A stretch of DNA of 64,000 bases from Saccostrea cucullata (GCF_032062105.1 NW_026928959.1:124001-188000), one strand, 5' to 3'; positions 7,987 through 15,192 are shown, numbered from the stretch's first letter. The notes: generated from the sequence alone by a model not told the origin. Translations and numbers: made by a program.

Positions 7987-9933
7987 ATGGAAAGCAATAA
8001 CGATGCAGAATTCAGTGATTTGTGCCAGAAGATCAAAGAGGAGGTCTGTGCTGTAAATTGTTCTGATCTTCTAGATGACGCTGTGGAAATGCATATTGAA
8101 TTGATATGGAACACCATTGATAGAATAAAAAGAAACAAAGAAACCCTCTCAATTATAGTTGATTCTTTAGTGGAAAACAATTTGAAAGGACTCACAGAAA
8201 ATGGGTTGTCGTTGTTGTTGGAAAAGAAGGAAGAGCTCGCTACTATGGAGGGCGCTGCCTCTCAGAATGTTCGGAGTTTTCTGTCCGTTGTCTGGATTGT
8301 GACGGACTCCTCTTCCTTGTTCTGTCATCAGTTAGTCTGTTCTTCTGTTGCTATTCAAAAGACCTCACAATTACTAGATTTTCTTAAGGATACTACTCCA
8401 AATGAATCTGTGTTGTTTTTAGTTAAGTTTATTTTAGGATGTTGGCATAACTGCCTCAGACACGTGTCCTCAGCGGCTCAGTATCATTTCAGAGAACTTG
8501 ATATCAATACGATAACACATAAGACAATAGCTAAGTTTGAGGACAGTCCTATGATTCTGGCGAAGGGTATCCTTGTCTTGTCATATCTACTGACAGAAAA
8601 TGACGAGGAAGAGGAGGGACTGCTGGAAACCAACATACTGGGGTTTATTATTCAGATTCTCAGTCAGGCCGTGAGGGCCGGGGACAGGGTGTCACGGAGA
8701 CATGGAATGAGTGTCCAGGAGGTGCTCCAAGGGATAAATAACCTCTCTGAAAATGACAAAAATAAAGAGGAACTCGTGACAACAGGTGCTCTACCAATTC
8801 TAGTCCAAATCCTGAAAGACAAACTAAATCCAGGGGAGGTTATACAAACTCTCATGATTATTTGGCGAATTTCTTTCTTGAATCAAAATTTTTCTAGAAT
8901 CATATCCGAACCAGATTTAATTAGTGGTAAGTAATGATGTCTTTTTGCTTAAATTAATTTAATCTATAATCTAAATATATGCCATGAAAGCTTTTTCATG
9001 CGTAAAGAAAGATAATATTTATTACACAGACCTTCATATATTTGTTTTCAGAAAATGGATGTACAAAACGATTAAGTAACGTTTTGTTTATAGTTGTAGA
9101 ACGTCTTCAGTTTGACGAAAATGAAAAGATACGACATTCCGCCACTGGTGCATTGTGGGAAATTAAACAACGCAATCTTAAAAATTATTCTATAAATGGT
9201 ATAGTTGTTATCTCTAATACAGATCGAAAATTTTCTGTGATTCTAATTCATCTTTTATTACATAGGTAAATGATATATACATGTATAATATATAATATGT
9301 ATGAATATGATCTACCAAAAAAGTTCAATATTTATCATCCGCCATAGATGACCCTCGACCTCACGTGATGATCAGCTACCAGTGGGATTCACAACACGTG
9401 ATGCTAAAGGTCAAGGACTCCCTAAAACAAGCCGGCTACAAAGTGTGGATGGATGTGGAAAACATAAGTCAGTACTGAAATTATGTCTGTAGTCGGTTTA
9501 TATCTTTATATTAGTCAATATATCAAAAGAAAATATATGAGCTAGAAGATGAAGAAAAGCATCAAAAGTCAGTATCAGTACTGAGTGCTACGTACAATTC
9601 AAATAAAAGTTACAACAAGAGGCCCAGGGGCCACAGCGCTCACCTGAGCACATATTTACCCCCCCCCCCTTCCAGGCGATAATCATTTGAACAAACTTGA
9701 ATCTACACTACCTGAGGATGATTCCATCTAAATACCCCGGGTATCACTAATCATAGCTTTGAAGTACCTGGGTACTTGAAAAGAAGAATTTAAAAGGTTT
9801 CCCGATATATCCCTATGTAAAACTTGGGTCGGCCATTTTGGCCCCACCCTATTCCCAGGGCCGGGGGGTCATGATTTGTACAAACTTGAATCTACACTAC
9901 CTGAGGATGATTCCACATGAGTTTCATCTTTCC

Positions 9934-9967
<34 letters not shown>

Positions 9968-12900
9968 GATTTTCCCCATTTTGGCCCCATCCTTGCCCCG
10001 GGGGTCATGACTTGAACAAACTTGAATCTACACTACCTGAGGATGATTCCACATGAGTTTCATCTTTCCTGGCCCAGTGGTTCTGGAGAAAAAGATTTTT
10101 AAAGTGTGGACCCTTGGATGATTTGGAAAACTATAATGCTTCCACATGAGTTTCATCTTTCATAGCACAGTGGTTCTGGAGAAGAAAATTTTTAAAATAT
10201 ATATTCCTGTAGTCGGCCATTTTGGCCCCACCCTTGCCCCGGAGGTCATGATTTGAACAAACTTGAATCTACACTACCTGAGGATGATTCCACATGAGTT
10301 TCATCTTTCCTGGCCCAGTTGTTCTGGAGAAGAAGATTTTTAAAGATTTTCCCTATATATTCCTATGTAAAAAGCCCCATCAAAAGAATCTACACTACCT
10401 GAGGATGCTTCCACATGAGTCACTAGCCCATTCTGGAGAAGAAAATTTTTAAAGATTTTTCCTATATATTCCTATGTAAAAAGTCGGCCATTTTGGGACT
10501 TGAACAAATGAGGATGATTCCACATGAGTTTCATCTTTCCTGGCCCAGTGGTTCTGGAGAAAAAGATTTTTAAAGATTTCCCCTATATATTCCTATGTAA
10601 AACTTTGGTCGGCCATTTTGGCCCCACCCTTTAAATACACTATACATGAGTTTCATCTTTCATGCACAGTGGTTCTGGAGAAGAAAATTTTTAAAGATTT
10701 TTCTTATATATTCCTAATTAATGATTTGAACAAACTTGAATCTACATTCTTATTTCTAATGATCTTTCCTGGCCCAGTTGTTCTGGAGAAGAAGATTTTT
10801 GATATTGAGGATGCTTCCACATGTTTCATCTCTCCTGACCCAGCGGTTCTGGAGAAGAAGATTTTTTAAAAAATTACAGATTGATCTCCCCTTTTTTCTT
10901 AAAATGACTGTGTTGAAATTGCAACGACGTCTTTGACAAATTAACTATCCTCTTGACTTCAAAGTTTAAATATACACTTGACTTTTAATGAACCACAAAC
11001 ATGACAAATATGAAATAAATCTTTTGTTTTACCTTTAATGACGATTGATTTTATGCAGTGTAGGCGGATCCACGGTGGAGGCGATGTCCCTGGCCATCGA
11101 GAACGCGGCTGTTGTGCTCGTTTGTATGTCACAGAAATACAAAGAAAGTCCTAACTGTAGATCAGGTAATTGTGTGTGTCACAGGTGAAAATAAGGTAAT
11201 TTTTATGTCACAAAATACAATAAATTAATTAATAATTAAAAAGGTGAACATCAGTTATAGTTCTGTATAAAGTAACAGGTGGGTCACAAAAATTAAATAT
11301 GTGTGTGTCGGAAAACTCTGTATATATGTTAAAAAATACAAGGAAAGTATATCACATAAATAAAAAAAAAAACTGTAGATCAAAACAGGTAATTGTATGT
11401 GTCACAAAATACAATAGAGTAATTCTGTCTCTCACAAAAATATAATTAAGGACCAGGTGAACGTCAGTTATAGTTCTGTATGTTACAACATACAATAAAG
11501 TAACAGGTGAAAATTAGGTAATTCAGTATGTCACAAAAATACAATAAAGTAACAGGTGAATATAAGGTAATTCTGTATGTCACAAAAATACAATAAAGGA
11601 CCAGGTGATCACTAGGTAATTCTAAACATCACAAAAATACAATTAAGTAACAGGTGAACATCAGGTAATTCTTTATGTCACAAAAATACAGTAAAGTAAA
11701 AGGGTGAACATCAGTTATAGTTCTGTATGTCACAAATATACAGTAATAAAAGTAACAGTTGAAAATTCGGTAATTCTGTATGTCACAAAAATTAGCAATC
11801 GCCACGCTCGACTTTGAAGTGAAAGTGCCAGCTATAGCCTCGTGTCAGCGGCAGGCGCTGGGAAAATTTTGTTTGTTAAACAATATACAATCAATCAATC
11901 AATCAATCAAAAATTGAATACAAAAGAGTGTCAGCTATAGCTATTTTTAGCACAGGGGCATGAAGGAGAGTTGGTATAAAAATTCCGTATGTCATAAAGG
12001 TTAAATTGGACAACATGCATAATTATGTTAAATTTTGACAATATATCGACAACGCGGCTCCAAGTTGTGAGAGATCGGAAAATCCAATTTCGAAATACTT
12101 TTTTTACTAAATGATAGTAATCAGCATGTATGTCAAAGTGTGATAAATATTCCTTATTAAAAGAATCATCTACACACATAAAAAAGAATAATCAATCAAA
12201 CCTTTATATCCATATTGGCATATTTTATTTGCTTCAGTATACAAATAATTCTACAAATTCAGTCAAGGGGATCCGAACCCCCCACCCCACCCCCTGTGGT
12301 TGGTAAGATTGATAAAGGTAAAATAATAAAAATTTGTATCTACATTAAATAACTCTAAAAGTTGCTTTAATAAAGAACAACAGAGTTTATGTATAAAGTA
12401 TTTTTTTTTAAAACATTATTTTTCTCGCCGTCAGAATTTTTATTAAAGCAACTTTCAGAGTGTAATGTTATCAATCCGGAAGACAAGCCCCTATGTATTC
12501 AGCATGTGTGAAAAATTTATGTGTCATTATCTGTGATAAATATTCCAAGAATACACACTTAATAAAGAATAATCCCAGACCTCTATATGCATATTTTATT
12601 TCTTACATTGTTGTAACATTTGTATACATTTAAGTGTGTCTAAAAATTTGAAGTGTGTGTTGATTTGTGTAATGTGTTTTTTTTTTTTTACATTTTAGAG
12701 GCGGATGATTGCTGTAACGTGTTTTATTTTAACATTTTAGAAGCAGAGTAAATTTACAAATTCTGGAAGTGTGTGTTGATTGCTGTGCTTTCTACATTTT
12801 AGAGGCGGAGTATGCGTACAAACTCCGGAAATGCGTGGTTCCCCTCCGACTTGAGCCTCGGTACGTTCCAGACGGGTGGCTAGGGTTAATAATAGGAACC

Positions 12901-13643
12901 AAACTCTACTTTGACTTCACTGCAGAAAAAAGATTTGATTTCATGGTGGGAAATCTAATCAAAGAACTCGGCTCAAGGGGTCGAATATTTAATATGCCCG
13001 ATAGCACTGATGGTATGTTTCCGTTCCAAGAAAAATATCTCTTACATTTATCGTTTTATCTCTTACAAAAATACTCGACTTTTCTGATTTTATATAGGCA
13101 AAGAAAAGCTTGAGCGACACGACACGGTGAACGGTGACAACTCATTACGTGAGGGACAAAACGGGGAGAATGTTTATTTGCAATGGACCGGAGCCCGGAT
13201 AAAGGAATGGATTGATAGCTGTAACCTATCAAGTCCAATCGAAAGGTGAGAAAACATTAGTGTCTTCACTAGGAAACGACATTGATATATGCATAATTCC
13301 TTCTCTTTCTGACTCTCAGATCTGGTGTTTAATATAACAGAGAACAAACTCTATATGGGGATTAAATATAAGGAAAGATACGCATATATGTATATTGCAT
13401 TAAAACATGTAATTAATAATAAATTTGAAATACACATTGTTCTTAGCCAGTGACCTATCACTGATTTCTTTTTGTAGACTCTATGACCTAGACCCTGAGC
13501 TTCTGTCTGAACTACTCCACCTACAGTCTACTTCACCAGGCTCGCTGTACAATGTCCTTAGATCTGATCTTCTCTTGAGTGGCCTGGATGTTATCAAATT
13601 CTCTAAGGAACTCAGAAAACTTGCTGATAACAAGCATATATAA
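7987..13643 (+). CDS. Cytoplasmic ARM-repeat / TIR / C-terminal SAM-like domain protein (~596 aa)
   Basis: Exons 7987-8926, 9094-9198, 9348-9467, 11064-11165, 12803-13012, 13098-13245, 13478-13643 join in frame with GT-AG introns (1791 nt). ARM-like helices (GALPILVQIL, ATGALWEI); TIR_2-type motifs HVMISYQWD, VWMDVE, MSLAIENAAVVLVCMSQKYKESPNCRSEAEYA, DGWLG; SAM-like tail WTGARIKEWIDSCNL...GLDVIKFSKELRKL. Probable 5'UTR exon ends at 7475. Confidence 0.88.
9615..10870 (-). mobile_element. Helitron/Helentron-derived non-autonomous element with ~166-bp satellite array (partial, degenerate)
   Basis: Terminal aacaagaggcccaggggccacagcgctcacctgagcac and repeated gaatctacactacctgaggatgattccac units, as in the elements at 19570 and 23220. 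Confidence 0.8.
11166..11795 (+). repeat. Intronic tandem repeat (~50-55 bp) derived from the end of TIR exon 4 plus its donor site
   Basis: Unit ctgtatgtcacaaaaatacaataaagtaacaggtgaacatcaggtaatt resembles exon end tgtatgtcacagaaatacaaagaaag...gatcag|gtaatt. Confidence 0.75.
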
Positions 13644-13812
13644 ACCAAATGAAACGTACACTAATATATTGTACTTTTAAAAAATAATGTTAATGTCAGC
13701 ATGTTTTATTATCAATTCACAATCTAAAACTGATGAAAATGTTAAATTTAATTAATTTTACAAGAAGGGATTAACTTTTATTATTGAAAATGATATATTC
13801 GGCATTAATAGA

Positions 13813-15192
13813 TTAAAACTTTGGAAGGTCTTTGAATTCAAAGAATCCTTTATCTTCCATTTGTTTCAAGACCCAAGGACCGTACTTCAAAATGGAGTTT
13901 GGTTTTCCTTCTTTAGATTGGGTTACAATATTAACGTTGATATCGGCATCAAATCGAGGCTCTAAGAAAAACGGTACGGAGAATCTATCAACACCAATGT
14001 CAAGGACTCTGTGTTGTGTTGCAATGAAACGACCTCCAACCATTTTACTTAAAAGGTCACCCACATTCATAACTAGGCCATTAGGGATTGGACGAACAGG
14101 CAGCCATTTTCTTTCCGGGGTCATAACCTCAAGTCCAGGAAAATGGAATGTTGCCAAAAGAGTTAAGAAACACGAGTCTGTATGTACGGGTGTGGTTACA
14201 ACCTTTCCGTCCTCTATGATAGCATTCTCAGGTGGTTTACCGTTCCACGGGGGATAATGTTGCAACCGAAAAGTTGTACATGGTTTGTCCTTAAACAGAT
14301 ATTCAAATACATTTTCTTTAAATCCCAATCCGTTAGATGCAAGCTTAAGAATATCCATGGCAACCTGATGCAAAACCCAATACATGTTTATCATCGTTGC
14401 CTTAAATTCAAAGTCTCCATTTTCTGGCGGCCATATAGACTTTTCGTAAAACCAGGGGTGCGTTCAACAGCGTATCGGCTAACCTAGCAGCTAAGTAGTA
14501 GATATCTATTTCTATTGAACGGACAGCTAACCTAGCTGCTAAATGTTAGATTTTGAATAAAGATAAATCAGTAAAAACTTTTTACTGGATCAAATAAAGT
14601 TTATTTCAGGCGAAAATATGTATTTAAATTTACATTTAATTCACTTAAATATAGGAAATAAACCTCCTTTTTGTTAAAATCTTGAATGCTGCAAATTTGT
14701 AACCAAGGAAACTATCTTGGATTTGGGACGTAGCATTAAATATTTATGCTAGGTCTCCATACGTAGCAGCTAGGTTAGCTCTCCGTTCAAGAGCGTAGCT
14801 TTACGTAGCAGCTACGTAGCAGCTACGCTGTTGAACGCACCCCAGTTTCCGCTGATGACGTCAGTGTCGTCTGGCGACACGTCAGCAGCTATCTCAAACC
14901 CCTCCTTCCTGCTCGGTAAATTCTCCACCACCGGGAAGTATCCGCGATACACATTGCTATTTTCTTTGTTAAACGACCTTTTTAAAAGAGCCTTTTTGAT
15001 TTCCCAGGGTCGATTGAAAAACCATTCGCAGCAGTGTTTCAATTTCCCCACCTCAAAATTTGGAATATTAACAATCCCTAGGAATCCAACACTCTCTAGA
15101 GCACTGACGACTTCGTTGCCTCCTTCTGCTGGGTCCTTTAAGGCCTCATCGAAGTTCAATATCGGAAGATTAAAATACTCCTCCTTCGACAT
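13813..15192 (-). pseudogene. 2-oxoglutarate/Fe(II)-dependent dioxygenase (IPNS/DIOX_N family, ~329 aa), CDS interrupted by a MITE
   Basis: N-part LPILNF..LESVGFLGIVN..YRGYFP..KEGFE; C-part RLQHYPP, HTDS, VMNVGDLL, HRV, RFSVPFF (HxD..H triad plus RxS). Removing 14456-14842 and one TSD restores ..GNWFYEKSIWP.. in frame (990 nt). No other introns. Confidence 0.85.
14456..14842. mobile_element. PIF/Harbinger-like MITE (387 bp) inserted in the oxygenase CDS
   Basis: Perfect TIR gggtgcgttcaacagcgta / tacgctgttgaacgcaccc; 3-bp TSD CAG at 14453-14455 and 14843-14845. Confidence 0.9.

What the first reader, a model, noticed from the sequence alone, without database searches (positions are those of the whole stretch)
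7987..13643. ARM-TIR-SAM protein: SARM1's domain types in a different order, with an intact putative NADase glutamate
Seen: hand-splicing, including exons absent from the ORF track (9348-9467, 11064-11165, 13098-13245), gives ARM repeats, then a TIR_2-type domain, then a SAM-like tail. The alphaC motif SPNCRSE keeps the Glu, whose codon is split G|AG by intron 4. Knowledge: SARM1 is ARM-SAM-SAM-TIR, and SARM1, plant and bacterial TIRs use this Glu to cleave NAD+; invertebrate cytoplasmic TIR families have been catalogued but mostly not characterised. Inference: a sensor / enzyme / oligomeriser immune NADase independent of SARM1.
Basis: partly seen in the sequence, partly recalled or inferred. 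Interest (0 to 1): 0.75.

Follow-up and report, generated by a model that had tools for sequence, protein, structure and literature searches.

The report
Oyster ARM-TIR-SAM gene, putative NADase
This is a real, transcribed oyster gene for a cytoplasmic protein with armadillo repeats, a TIR domain and a SAM tail, from an old, already catalogued but untested invertebrate family that may cleave NAD+ as SARM1 does.

Summary
The Glu codon is split G|AG at 11165/12803-12804.

Two corrections:
- Exon 2 starts at 9094, not at the 9052 acceptor.
- The public gene model adds a 19-nt upstream coding exon at 7457-7475.

The locus is already annotated. Database protein P0151 ("uncharacterized protein", Saccostrea cucullata, 607 aa) matches the window's exons at 99.7-100%.

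The fold is an ARM solenoid (Z about 22), a canonical TIR (Z 15.2 to the SARM1 TIR), a disordered linker and a five-helix SAM.

The Glu is invariant in 55 of 55 relatives. It aligns with Cat1 E74 and with the Glu of TIR-1's HKE motif. Three further Cat1 active-site residues are also invariant.

The family runs from corals to amphioxus, always in the order ARM-TIR-SAM. It has been catalogued as "ARM-TIR" and "TIR-SAM". I found no functional study. NADase activity, the sensor role and the immune role remain inference.

New member of a known but uncharacterised kind; interest about 0.5.

The parts
7457..7475 (+). Putative first coding exon (MDQFYA plus one base), donor gtaagt. Used by the public model P0151; the alternative start is the ATG at 7987.
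   Evidence: Found. P0151 residues 6-324 align from 7969. No read evidence: the stretch laid began at 7900.
7973..8926 (+). Large exon encoding most of the armadillo-repeat solenoid. Acceptor ag at 7971-7972; in-frame ATG at 7987.
   Evidence: Open frame. Joint 8926|9094. Arm hits. Structure Z about 22 to APC, p120 and beta-catenin ARM.
9094..9198 (+). Exon encoding the last ARM repeat and the ARM-TIR junction. The 9052 acceptor is not used.
   Evidence: Joints 8926|9094 and 9198|9348 in X1 and X2 contigs and in X22 reads. Same junction in P0001 and P0151.
9348..9467 (+). TIR exon 1: strand A (HVMISY), helix A, strand B (VWMD) and the start of the BB loop. Holds the invariant Ser (9374-9376) and Asp (9452-9454).
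   Evidence: TIR_2 E 5.4e-7. Joints. Secondary structure. Invariance.
11064..11165 (+). TIR exon 2: rest of the BB loop, helix B, strand C and the SPNCRS motif. Holds the invariant Ser at 11147-11149. The last base G (11165) is the first base of the Glu codon.
   Evidence: TIR_2 E 3.4e-5. Joints 9467|11064 and 11165|12803. Phases.
12803..13012 (+). TIR exon 3: AG (12803-12804) completes the Glu codon (E434 of P0151). Then helix C, strand D, the DGWLG loop, and helices D and E.
   Evidence: 100% match to P0151 434-504. Glu invariant in 55 of 55.
13098..13245 (+). Exon for the disordered linker and the first SAM helix (the W..I.EWI segment).
   Evidence: Joints. Linker pLDDT below 50 and helix at 523-532 in the P0001 model. 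SAM profile hits.
13478..13643 (+). Last exon: SAM helices 2-5 and the TAA stop.
   Evidence: Joint 13245|13478. Five-helix C-terminal domain with pLDDT 80-87. SMS1, liprin and SARM1 SAM hits. Polyhomeotic SAM TM 0.67.

Best explanation
Shown: the locus is an intact, spliced and transcribed gene. It has 7 coding exons from the ATG at 7987, or 8 with the upstream exon of the public model. It encodes a soluble protein of about 600 aa with four parts:
- an N-terminal armadillo-repeat solenoid of about 340 aa;
- a canonical TIR domain of about 125 aa;
- a disordered linker of about 30 aa;
- one C-terminal SAM domain of about 70 aa.
It belongs to an old animal family that keeps this order and occurs in cnidarians, molluscs, annelids, nemerteans, echinoderms, hemichordates and amphioxus.

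Inferred: the TIR is an NAD+-cleaving enzyme. Its active-site Glu (E434 in P0151, codon 11165/12803-04) works with the invariant Ser, Asp and Ser that match the Cat1 active site. As in other TIR NADases, activity would need TIR-TIR assembly. The SAM domain would supply self-association, and the much faster-evolving ARM domain would hold the TIR off or bind the activating ligand or partner. Whether the output is NAD+ depletion or a signalling nucleotide, and whether the setting is immunity, is unknown.
For: Gene model and transcription:
- Searches give the splice sites and RNA joints.
- The exons are identical to annotated protein P0151.

Domains:
- ARM: E 5e-9 to designed armadillo proteins, E 3.7e-22 to Vac8 with the family profile, and Z about 22 over residues 4-348.
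- TIR: TIR_2 at 84 bits in orthologue P0001. Fold matches are Z 16.4 to Hydra TRR-2, 15.2 to the SARM1 TIR (rmsd 2.1 over 120 residues), 14.9 to MyD88 and 13.2 to Cat1.
- SAM: the family profile hits TIR-1 SAM1 at 3.2e-5, liprin-beta1 SAM at 1.1e-4, SMS1 SAM at 1.3e-4 across the whole domain, and human SARM1 SAM1 at about 3e-4. The model shows a five-helix bundle with pLDDT 80-87. The Atlas structure match to polyhomeotic SAM has TM 0.67.

Catalytic site:
- The best PDB sequence match of the TIR is the NADase Cat1 (E 0.0017; 9e-4).
- In that alignment Cat1 S7, D33, S68 and E74 fall on family residues S357, D383, S416 and E422 (P0001 numbers). D33A, S68A and E74A abolish Cat1 function (passage read in PMC12162218); S7 lines the pocket but was not among the substitutions named there.
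- Those four residues are invariant: E 55 of 55, S416 55 of 55, D383 52 of 52 and S357 50 of 50 sequences that have the column.
- The weak TIR-TIR stretch of the TIR-1 hit puts the Glu on the Glu of HKE.
- Counting the 10 inserted residues in that alignment from the structural start 1<->565 lands on residue 642. That is the residue mutated in entry 7cm7, 'Sarm1 E642A'.

Conservation: the TIR has 63% mean pairwise identity, against 28% for ARM, 33% for SAM and 14% for the linker.

Domain order: among 330 retrieved proteins, 177 are arm-tir-sam and 0 have SAM before TIR.
Against: - No biochemical data exist for any member in the literature I could search.
- The Trp four residues before the Glu in Cat1 (W70) and TIR-1 is Asn, Ser or Ala in 55 of 55 members. 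That Trp helps hold the substrate in known TIR NADases (recalled knowledge).
- The two basic residues after Ser-Tyr in TIR-1 (ISYRR) are Gln-Trp here.
- The top structural match is a non-enzymatic-type receptor TIR, Hydra TRR-2. MyD88 and IL-1R TIRs score within about 1.5 Z of SARM1. The fold therefore does not separate enzyme from adaptor.
- A Glu at this position also occurs in some signalling TIRs (recalled).
- The alignment to TIR-1's TIR is weak on its own (domain i-Evalue 53).
- Pfam finds no SAM in this protein itself. SAM-type hits at E<=0.01 occur in only 9 (SAM_2), 6 (SAM_3) and 5 (SAM_1) of 38 members.
- The SAM could not be compared with PDB structures by itself.
- RNA depth is low in the two raw-read runs: X22 about 1x, X23 none over the exons.
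Confidence: 0.5

Rival explanations
1. A non-enzymatic adaptor or scaffold. The TIR only makes TIR-TIR contacts with Toll-like or IL-1R-like receptors or other adaptors. ARM and SAM are protein-binding modules that recruit downstream partners. This is the usual reading of 'ARM-TIR' proteins in mollusc immunome papers.
For: - The structural matches to Hydra TRR-2, MyD88, IL-1RAcPb, TIRAP and TRIF TIRs are as good as those to SARM1.
- The Trp at -4 of the Glu is absent in 55 of 55 members.
- The genome holds at least 150 TIR_2 matches, mostly in long TLR-like open frames, so partners are plentiful.
- Papers list ARM-TIR among candidate TLR adaptors (passages in PMC9334734; figure legend in PMC4346834).
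Against: - Four residues that line the Cat1 NADase site, three of them shown there by mutation to be needed, are invariant from corals to amphioxus.
- The TIR is 58-64% identical between oyster and coral or amphioxus, while the ARM is about 20-23%. That is unusually strict for a pure docking surface.
- With the family profile, the only TIRs hit in the PDB at E<=10 are the enzymatic Cat1, RPS4 and TIR-1/SARM1. No TLR, MyD88 or IL-1R TIR appears among the 47 hits.
Confidence: 0.33
2. A rearranged relative of SARM1 rather than an independent invention. An ancestral ARM-SAM-TIR gene was permuted to ARM-TIR-SAM, so function and regulation would be directly SARM1-like.
For: - Foldseek ranks full-length human SARM1 chains first for the whole model (E 8e-7).
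- The best PDB profile hits of the tail are the first SAM of TIR-1 and SARM1.
- The Atlas structure search puts the ARM domain as close (TM 0.78-0.79) to two green-alga clusters carrying Arm+SAM_2+TIR_2 as to its own family. Generic ARM proteins score 0.57-0.69.
Against: - TM to SARM1 is only 0.18-0.27 overall.
- In the second-look alignment the ARM's top 50 entries are APC, catenins, importin-alpha and designed repeats. SARM1 is not among them.
- The single-sequence search of TIR plus tail finds no SARM1 at E<=10.
- Liprin and SMS1 SAMs score like SARM1's.
- There is one SAM, not two, and none of 330 retrieved proteins has SAM before TIR.
- A 2026 preprint places the SARM1 TIR in a bacterial-like clade apart from all other animal TIRs (section 5 of PMC13142454, read).
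Confidence: 0.12
3. A pseudogene or an artefact of hand-splicing: the frame is kept only by chosen splice sites and no such protein is made.
For: - Low read depth in X22 and none over the exons in X23.
- The short exons are invisible as ORFs.
- There are decoy acceptor copies upstream of exon 5.
Against: - One RNA contig carries all six joints in frame.
- The same junctions appear in orthologues at 89%, 68% and 62% identity.
- There are no stops in any exon.
- The TIR is under strong constraint: 96.9% identity to the congener orthologue P0001, against 65.6% for the linker.
Confidence: 0.02

Closest known systems
SARM1 / C. elegans TIR-1 / Drosophila dSarm (ARM-SAM-SAM-TIR NAD+ hydrolase)
   Same: - The same three domain types.
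- TIR fold Z 15.2, rmsd 2.1 over 120 residues.
- The Glu falls on the Glu of TIR-1's HKE motif, at the position of SARM1 E642.
- The tail's best PDB profile hits are the first SAM of TIR-1 and SARM1.
   Different: - The order is ARM-TIR-SAM, with one SAM, not two.
- The TIR sequence is not SARM1-like: no hit at E<=10 with the single sequence.
- Trp at -4 and the Arg-Arg after Ser-Tyr are replaced.
- The ARM is no closer to SARM1's than to APC or the catenins.
- The allosteric NMN/NAD+ pocket and mitochondrial targeting were not tested.
'ARM-TIR' proteins of molluscs and the 'ecTIR-DC' families of invertebrates (Zhang et al. 2015, PMC4346834; Kron 2022, PMC9334734; Gerdol et al. 2017, not held)
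   Same: - A cytoplasmic armadillo-plus-TIR protein.
- Several paralogues per genome: about 10 related TIR exons here, and 11 ARM-TIR genes counted in Aplysia.
- Widespread in invertebrates, with no vertebrate among the 120 listed hits.
- Uncharacterised.
This gene is most simply a member of that class.
   Different: - The class name does not mention the SAM tail, which Pfam mostly misses.
- I could not see which ecTIR-DC number it has, because the paper is not held.
- The Aplysia paper defines 'SARM' as TIR+SAM. Members with a detectable SAM may therefore be counted there as SARM.
Cat1, the CRISPR-associated TIR NADase (PDB 9mud; PMC12162218)
   Same: - It is the best sequence match of the TIR in the PDB.
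- Active-site residues S7, D33, S68 and E74 are identical and invariant in the family.
- Fold Z 13.2.
   Different: - Bacterial, with a CARF sensor, and activated by cA4 into filaments.
- Cat1 H8, N9, N10 and W70 are Tyr, Gln, Trp and Asn/Ser here.
- The second-subunit residues K121 and Y122 lie outside the aligned part.
Amphioxus 'TIR-SAM' hybrid gene model (Zhang et al. 2008, PMC2575513)
   Same: The TIR-then-SAM combination was noted and confirmed by cDNA (passage read). Amphioxus members of this family exist: P0039 and P0256.
   Different: I could not check that the named model is this family, because its details are in a supplementary file that is closed. No ARM and no function are discussed in the passage.
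Polymerising SAM domains (polyhomeotic, TEL/ETV6, liprin, SMS1)
   Same: A five-helix bundle. Profile E is 1e-4 to liprin-beta1 and SMS1 SAM, with weaker hits to ETV6, SHANK and EPS8. TM to polyhomeotic SAM models is 0.67.
   Different: Below Pfam's cut-offs in this protein. Whether it forms polymers, closed rings or nothing is unknown.

Membership tests
SARM1 family | Domain order ARM - SAM - SAM - TIR | tested here: not met
   The order is ARM - TIR - linker - single SAM in the model. None of 330 retrieved relatives has SAM before TIR.
SARM1 family | TIR of the SARM1 (bacterial-like) sequence clade | tested here: inconclusive
   No SARM1 hit at E<=10 with TIR plus tail as a single sequence. 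With the profile there is only a weak TIR stretch (i-Evalue 53). No tree was built.
SARM1 family | Catalytic Glu in helix C (E642 in human SARM1) | tested here: met
   The Glu is aligned to the Glu of HKE in TIR-1. The position arithmetic gives 642 (entry title 'E642A'). Invariant in 55 of 55.
SARM1 family | Octameric ring through tandem SAMs; ARM allosteric NMN/NAD+ site; autoinhibition | not testable with these tools
   Needs biochemistry or a structure. Only one SAM is present.
ARM-TIR class / ecTIR-DC proteins of invertebrates | Armadillo repeats plus a TIR domain in one cytoplasmic protein (no signal peptide or membrane span) | tested here: met
   ARM. TIR_2. The highest 19-residue hydropathy mean is 1.60 and lies inside the TIR core; the N-terminus is polar. 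This is a simple scan, not a dedicated predictor.
ARM-TIR class / ecTIR-DC proteins of invertebrates | Conserved across invertebrate phyla, missing from vertebrates | tested here: met
   Named hits come from molluscs, nemerteans, an annelid, hemichordates, amphioxus and corals, and echinoderms. No vertebrate is among the 120 and 71 listed rows. This is absence from a list, not proof of absence.
Enzymatic (NAD+-cleaving) TIR domains | Active-site Glu plus pocket residues as defined by mutagenesis in a solved NADase TIR | tested here: met
   Cat1 S7, D33, S68 and E74 correspond to invariant S, D, S and E. Four of the seven same-subunit Cat1 pocket residues are identical, and N9 is Gln.
Enzymatic (NAD+-cleaving) TIR domains | Aromatic Trp four residues before the Glu | tested here: not met
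   Asn in 33, Ser in 21 and Ala in 1 of 55. Cat1 and TIR-1 have Trp there. Its role is recalled knowledge.
Enzymatic (NAD+-cleaving) TIR domains | Measured NAD+ consumption that depends on the Glu and on self-association | not testable with these tools
SAM domain | Five-helix bundle with significant profile similarity to known SAMs | tested here: met
   Helices 523-532, 540-544, 547-559, 561-571 and 576-591, with pLDDT 80-87. PDB profile E is 3e-5 to 1e-4 to SAMs. Atlas TM 0.67 to polyhomeotic SAM.
SAM domain | Score over Pfam's gathering threshold | tested here: not met
   No SAM hit for the exon translations or for P0001. Among 38 relatives, 9 SAM_2, 6 SAM_3 and 5 SAM_1 hits at E<=0.01, mostly under the cut-off. 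One relative, P0264, carries a precomputed SAM_2.

The most novel reading that the evidence does not exclude
Animals have a second lineage of regulated NAD+-cleaving TIR enzymes besides SARM1. It is built from the same three modules in the permuted order ARM-TIR-SAM and is evolutionarily separate from SARM1. It was already present in the cnidarian-bilaterian ancestor, was lost in vertebrates, insects and nematodes, and was multiplied in molluscs with fast-changing ARM sensor domains.
Probability: 0.4. Interest if true: 0.75.

Novelty: new member of a known kind. Interest (0 to 1): 0.5.

Why it matters
SARM1 is the only animal TIR with a well-established NADase activity (my recalled reading of the field). 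A 2026 TIR atlas stresses that several animal TIR clades are wholly unstudied (PMC13142454, section 5).

This family is a concrete and easily testable candidate:
- It is small and soluble.
- Its TIR is extremely conserved, and four residues of a proven NADase pocket are invariant.
- A built-in SAM and an ARM domain invite the same questions about oligomerisation and autoinhibition that were answered for SARM1.

A positive assay would show that the ARM/SAM/TIR logic arose or was rearranged more than once. It would also give oysters, corals and amphioxus an NAD+-based cell-death or signalling arm.

A negative assay would be a useful counter-example: a TIR that keeps the Glu and pocket residues without catalysis.

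Tried and rejected
1. Exon 2 from the 9052 acceptor (my first hand model). Rejected: all RNA joints and both orthologue models use 9094.

2. Pfam on single exons for ARM and SAM. Too short or too divergent; only TIR_2 was found. The hits on exons 5 and 6 (PSP1, MMM1, DUF6104; E 0.04-0.3) are chance.

3. Structural test of the SAM against the PDB. In both models the larger domain filled the lists: ARM, TIR.

4. Locating a canonical SARM1 gene in this genome by crossing TIR_2 and SAM_2 family hits and reading one tandem-SAM locus (L004). That locus does not look like SARM1, so I stopped. Co-existence of SARM1 therefore rests on the literature only: 3 SARM1 ORFs listed for a congeneric oyster transcriptome (passages of PMC4892480).

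5. A TIR phylogeny against SARM1. Not done, because no SARM1 sequence was held as a stored protein and I did not type one.

6. Literature:
- Gerdol et al. 2017 is not held. I saw only how three papers cite its ecTIR-DC classes.
- Searches for functional work returned nothing: 'NADase + TIR domain + oyster + armadillo' gave 0 papers. 'TIR, armadillo, SAM domain, coral, SARM-like' gave 0. 'ARM-TIR-SAM' occurred in none, and 'TIR-SAM' in 3 papers, of which 2 were listed.
These may classify this family: Supp. Table 1 of PMC13142454, SFile3 of PMC9334734 and Additional data file 5 of PMC2575513.

7. Earlier notes of this scan held nothing on this gene.

Exon translations were searched one by one. 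For whole-protein work I used database proteins returned by the tools: P0151, which matches the window's exons, and its congener orthologue P0001.

Full report
THE SEQUENCE

The window is AT-rich eukaryotic DNA (GC 0.29-0.45) with no N. Between 7987 and 13643 on the + strand, a chain of open segments can be linked by canonical GT..AG introns. My first hand model had seven exons: 7987-8926, 9052-9198, 9348-9467, 11064-11165, 12803-13012, 13098-13245 and 13478-13643. The phases are 1, 1, 1, 1, 1 and 2.

Their translations were searched one at a time.

TRANSCRIPTION AND SPLICING

I laid two raw RNA-seq runs (X22, X23) and the contigs of two further runs (X1, X2) on 7900-13700.

One 1531-nt contig of X1 covers 8512-8925, 9093-9197, 9347-9467, 11064-11163, 12801-13011, 13097-13243 and 13476-13699. 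With the stated cut offsets, this gives the joints 8926|9094, 9198|9348, 9467|11064, 11165|12803, 13012|13098 and 13245|13478, all GT..AG.

- X2 contigs repeat four of these joints.
- X22 shows one or two reads each for three of them.
- X23 has no reads on the exons.

Exon 2 starts at 9094, 42 nt downstream of the acceptor I had picked. No laid RNA uses 9052.

Depth in the raw runs is low (about 1x), so the gene is weakly expressed in those samples. The 'RNA?' label of X1 and X2 is the tool's guess, but spliced contigs can only come from RNA.

THE GENE IS ALREADY ANNOTATED

A HMMER scan of 1.84 billion representatives with exon 1 (collected) found 288 proteins at E<=0.001. The best was P0001 (592 aa, 88% identical). 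A second search with P0001 returned P0151, 607 aa, named by NCBI 'uncharacterized protein LOC134279406 [Saccostrea cucullata]'.

tblastn of P0151 on the window gives 99.7% identity over residues 6-324 and 100% over the exon-3, -5, -6 and -7 pieces. The exon-2 and exon-4 alignments run past the exon edges and so score lower. P0151 uses the 9094 acceptor.

P0151 starts 11 residues earlier. A 19-nt exon at 7457-7475 (ATG..., donor gtaagt) is spliced to 7973, behind the ag at 7971-7972. The eight pieces add up to 1824 nt, which is 607 codons plus a stop. I have no read evidence for that first junction.

For whole-protein work I used P0151 and its congener orthologue P0001 by id.

DOMAINS

ARM
- Exon 1 alone gives only weak Arm hits.
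- P0001 matches designed armadillo-repeat proteins at E 5e-9.
- The family profile matches Vac8 at 3.7e-22 and beta-catenin at about 1e-13.
- In the AlphaFold model of P0001 (38-sequence alignment A1, mean pLDDT 82.5), residues 2-341 are an all-helical solenoid. It aligns with APC, p120, beta-catenin, importin-alpha and designed repeats at Z 20-22 over about 300 residues.

TIR
- Pfam TIR_2 hits exon 3 (E 5.4e-7) and exon 4 (E 3.4e-5) on their own, and P0001 at 84 bits.
- A model of a natural TIR-SAM fragment (P0262, 232 aa; 55-sequence alignment A2; pLDDT 83.9) matches these structures: Hydra TRR-2 TIR (Z 16.4), SARM1 TIR 9hq0 (Z 15.2, rmsd 2.1, 120 residues), MyD88 (14.9), IL-1RAcPb (14.9), TIR-1 (14.1), oyster TIR-STING (13.5), Cat1 (13.2) and RPS4 (13.0). 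Foldseek agrees.
- It is a canonical TIR. The fold does not say which kind.

Linker
- Residues 486-517 of P0001 have pLDDT below 50 and 14% mean identity.

SAM
- Pfam sees no SAM in the exon translations or in P0001.
- A profile of 16 TIR-SAM sequences (A3) hits the first SAM of C. elegans TIR-1 (E 3.2e-5), liprin-beta1 SAM (1.1e-4), the SMS1 SAM over its whole length (1.3e-4) and the first SAM of human SARM1 (about 3e-4). It then hits EPS8, SHANK2, FLI1, neurabin, ETV6 and DGK-delta SAMs at E 0.03-2.
- The model has five helices (523-532, 540-544, 547-559, 561-571, 576-591) with pLDDT 80-87.
- The ESM Atlas structure search with residues 528-607 of P0151 finds its own family and polyhomeotic SAM models at TM 0.66-0.67. 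The feature search points to SAM clusters at scores that count only as leads.
- Among relatives, SAM_2, SAM_3 and SAM_1 are hit at E<=0.01 in 9, 6 and 5 of 38. P0264 from a clam carries a precomputed SAM_2.
A PDB comparison of the tail alone could not be run.

THE GLUTAMATE

With TIR plus tail of P0001 as a single query, the only PDB hit at E<=10 is Cat1, the CRISPR-associated TIR NADase (E 0.0017). The profile gives Cat1 at 9e-4 and RPS4 TIR at 0.04. No TLR, MyD88 or IL-1R TIR is among the 47 hits.

In the printed Cat1 alignment, the family's S-Y-Q-W lies on Cat1 S7-H8-N9-N10. WMD lies on W31-I32-D33. YKESPSCRSE lies on Y65...S68-D69-W70-C71-W72-D73-E74.

The Cat1 paper states that S7, H8, N9, N10, D33, S68 and E74 of one subunit, and K121 and Y122 of the next, line the NADase site. 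It also states that N10A, D33A, S68A, E74A, K121A and Y122A are inactive in vivo (passage found in PMC12162218).

Four of the seven same-subunit residues (S, D, S, E) are thus identical here, and they are invariant:
- E422 in 55 of 55.
- S416 in 55 of 55.
- D383 in 52 of 52.
- S357 in 50 of 50 sequences that have the column.

The weak second stretch of the TIR-1 hit (i-Evalue 53) aligns the family's C....RSE with TIR-1's C-edwv-HKE, that is Glu on Glu.

That alignment holds 10 extra TIR-1 residues before the Glu. The structural alignment starts at model 1 <-> SARM1 565. So model residue 68 falls at 565+67+10 = 642, the residue mutated in the entry titled 'Sarm1 E642A'. This arithmetic assumes equal insert lengths in TIR-1 and human SARM1, so I count it as consistency, not proof.

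Against catalysis:
- The Trp four residues before the Glu in Cat1 and TIR-1 is Asn (33), Ser (21) or Ala (1) in the 55 sequences.
- TIR-1's Arg-Arg after Ser-Tyr is Gln-Trp here.

THE FAMILY

Named relatives come from these groups:
- Bivalves: Ostrea, Magallana, Mytilus, scallops, Pinctada, unionids, Dreissena, Mya, Ruditapes.
- Gastropods, a cephalopod and a chiton.
- Nemerteans and the annelid Owenia.
- Hemichordates and amphioxus.
- Corals: Porites, Acropora, Oculina.
- Echinoderms.
An Atlas cluster is mostly from rotifers. No vertebrate, insect or nematode name appears in the listed rows. That is absence from a list only.

- 177 arm-tir-sam
- 88 arm only
- 30 arm-tir
- 19 tir-sam
- 13 tir
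- 1 arm-tir-sam-arm-tir-sam
- 1 arm-tir-arm
- 1 with no hit
Many of the arm-only and arm-tir rows look like truncated calls; I saw truncation only in the four I read, P0002, P0003, P0009 and P0011. None has SAM before TIR. These HMMs come from the family itself, so the count describes order, not independent detection.

Conservation is very uneven. Mean pairwise identity is 63% for the TIR, 28% for ARM, 33% for SAM and 14% for the linker. Oyster against coral or amphioxus is 58-64% in the TIR but 20-23% in the ARM.

In this genome the TIR exon 5 has 10 further matches at 39-49% identity. The ARM exon has two distant ones, and the last exon has none. The genome holds at least 150 TIR_2 matches in all.

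WHAT IS IN PRINT

- 'ARM-TIR' is a counted class in the Pacific oyster immune-gene survey (figure legend seen in PMC4346834).
- It is also a counted class in the Aplysia immunome: 11 genes, function unknown. 'SARM' is defined there simply as TIR+SAM (passages in PMC9334734).
- A 'TIR-SAM' hybrid model confirmed by cDNA is mentioned for amphioxus (passage in PMC2575513).
- Gerdol et al. 2017, which defined the 'ecTIR-DC' families, is not held. I saw only citing passages and cannot give the family number.
- A 2026 preprint's TIR atlas places the SARM1 TIR in a bacterial-like clade apart from other animal TIRs. It calls several animal clades uncharacterised (section 5 read).
- UniRef names several members 'ADP-ribosyl cyclase/cyclic ADP-ribose hydrolase'. 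I take this to be a rule-based name for TIR domains (my reading, not checked).
- I found no functional study. Closed supplements may hold classifications that I could not see.

READING

Shown:
- An intact, expressed gene.
- ARM, TIR and SAM folds in that order.
- An invariant Glu and three more invariant residues at the positions of a proven NADase pocket.
- A pan-invertebrate family.

Inferred:
- NAD+ cleavage that depends on assembly.
- The SAM as the assembling module.
- The ARM as lock or sensor.

I put about 0.5 on that mechanism, about 0.33 on a purely adaptor role and about 0.12 on descent by rearrangement from a SARM1-like gene.

The hints for the third reading are these. Foldseek ranks full-length SARM1 first for the whole model, though at TM 0.18-0.27. 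The SARM1 and TIR-1 SAM is the top SAM hit. The ARM's structural closeness to green-alga Arm+SAM_2+TIR_2 clusters (TM 0.78-0.79) exceeds that to generic ARM proteins (0.57-0.69).

An immune role has no direct support here.

VERDICT

It is worth an assay.

Noticed in passing
window 9600-10900 (intron 3): A block of degenerate repeats with a period of about 121 nt. It is very abundant in RNA and contigs: up to about 900x in raw reads against about 1x on the exons. Many 'goes back' joints and loose ends show that the reads come from other copies of a dispersed or satellite element, not from this intron.
   Followed up: partly
window 11419-11792 (intron 4): A tandem repeat of 49 bp in 7.5 copies, 79% matches. 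No reads lie on it.
   Followed up: no
window 12691, 12733 and 12795: Three copies of the exon-5 acceptor with the first bases of the exon (CATTTTAGA[A/G]GC[A/G]GA). The two upstream copies are decoys inside intron 4. Only the third is used in the RNA contigs.
   Followed up: partly
window 13813-14394, minus strand: A 193-aa open frame lies tail to tail with this gene, 170 nt after its stop. I did not test it.
   Followed up: no
window 8512 (run X1, record 1): The spliced RNA contig carries 82 unmatched letters before 8512, in the middle of exon 1. This could be a chimeric contig, a divergent allele or an alternative 5' end. It is unexplained.
   Followed up: no
P0041 (1195 aa): One relative has the whole ARM-TIR-SAM unit twice in tandem. 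It is either a fused gene model or a true duplication.
   Followed up: no
ESM Atlas clusters: Two clusters, mostly from green algae, carry Arm + SAM_2 + TIR_2. Their ARM models match this protein's ARM at TM 0.78-0.79, as well as its own family does. The domain order in those proteins was not visible.
   Followed up: no
genome G000: At least 150 TIR_2 matches (357 first-look candidates). Many sit in long single open frames of 650-900 aa, clustered on contigs such as C21406, C10979 and C15585. This is the large TLR-type expansion expected of an oyster.
   Followed up: no
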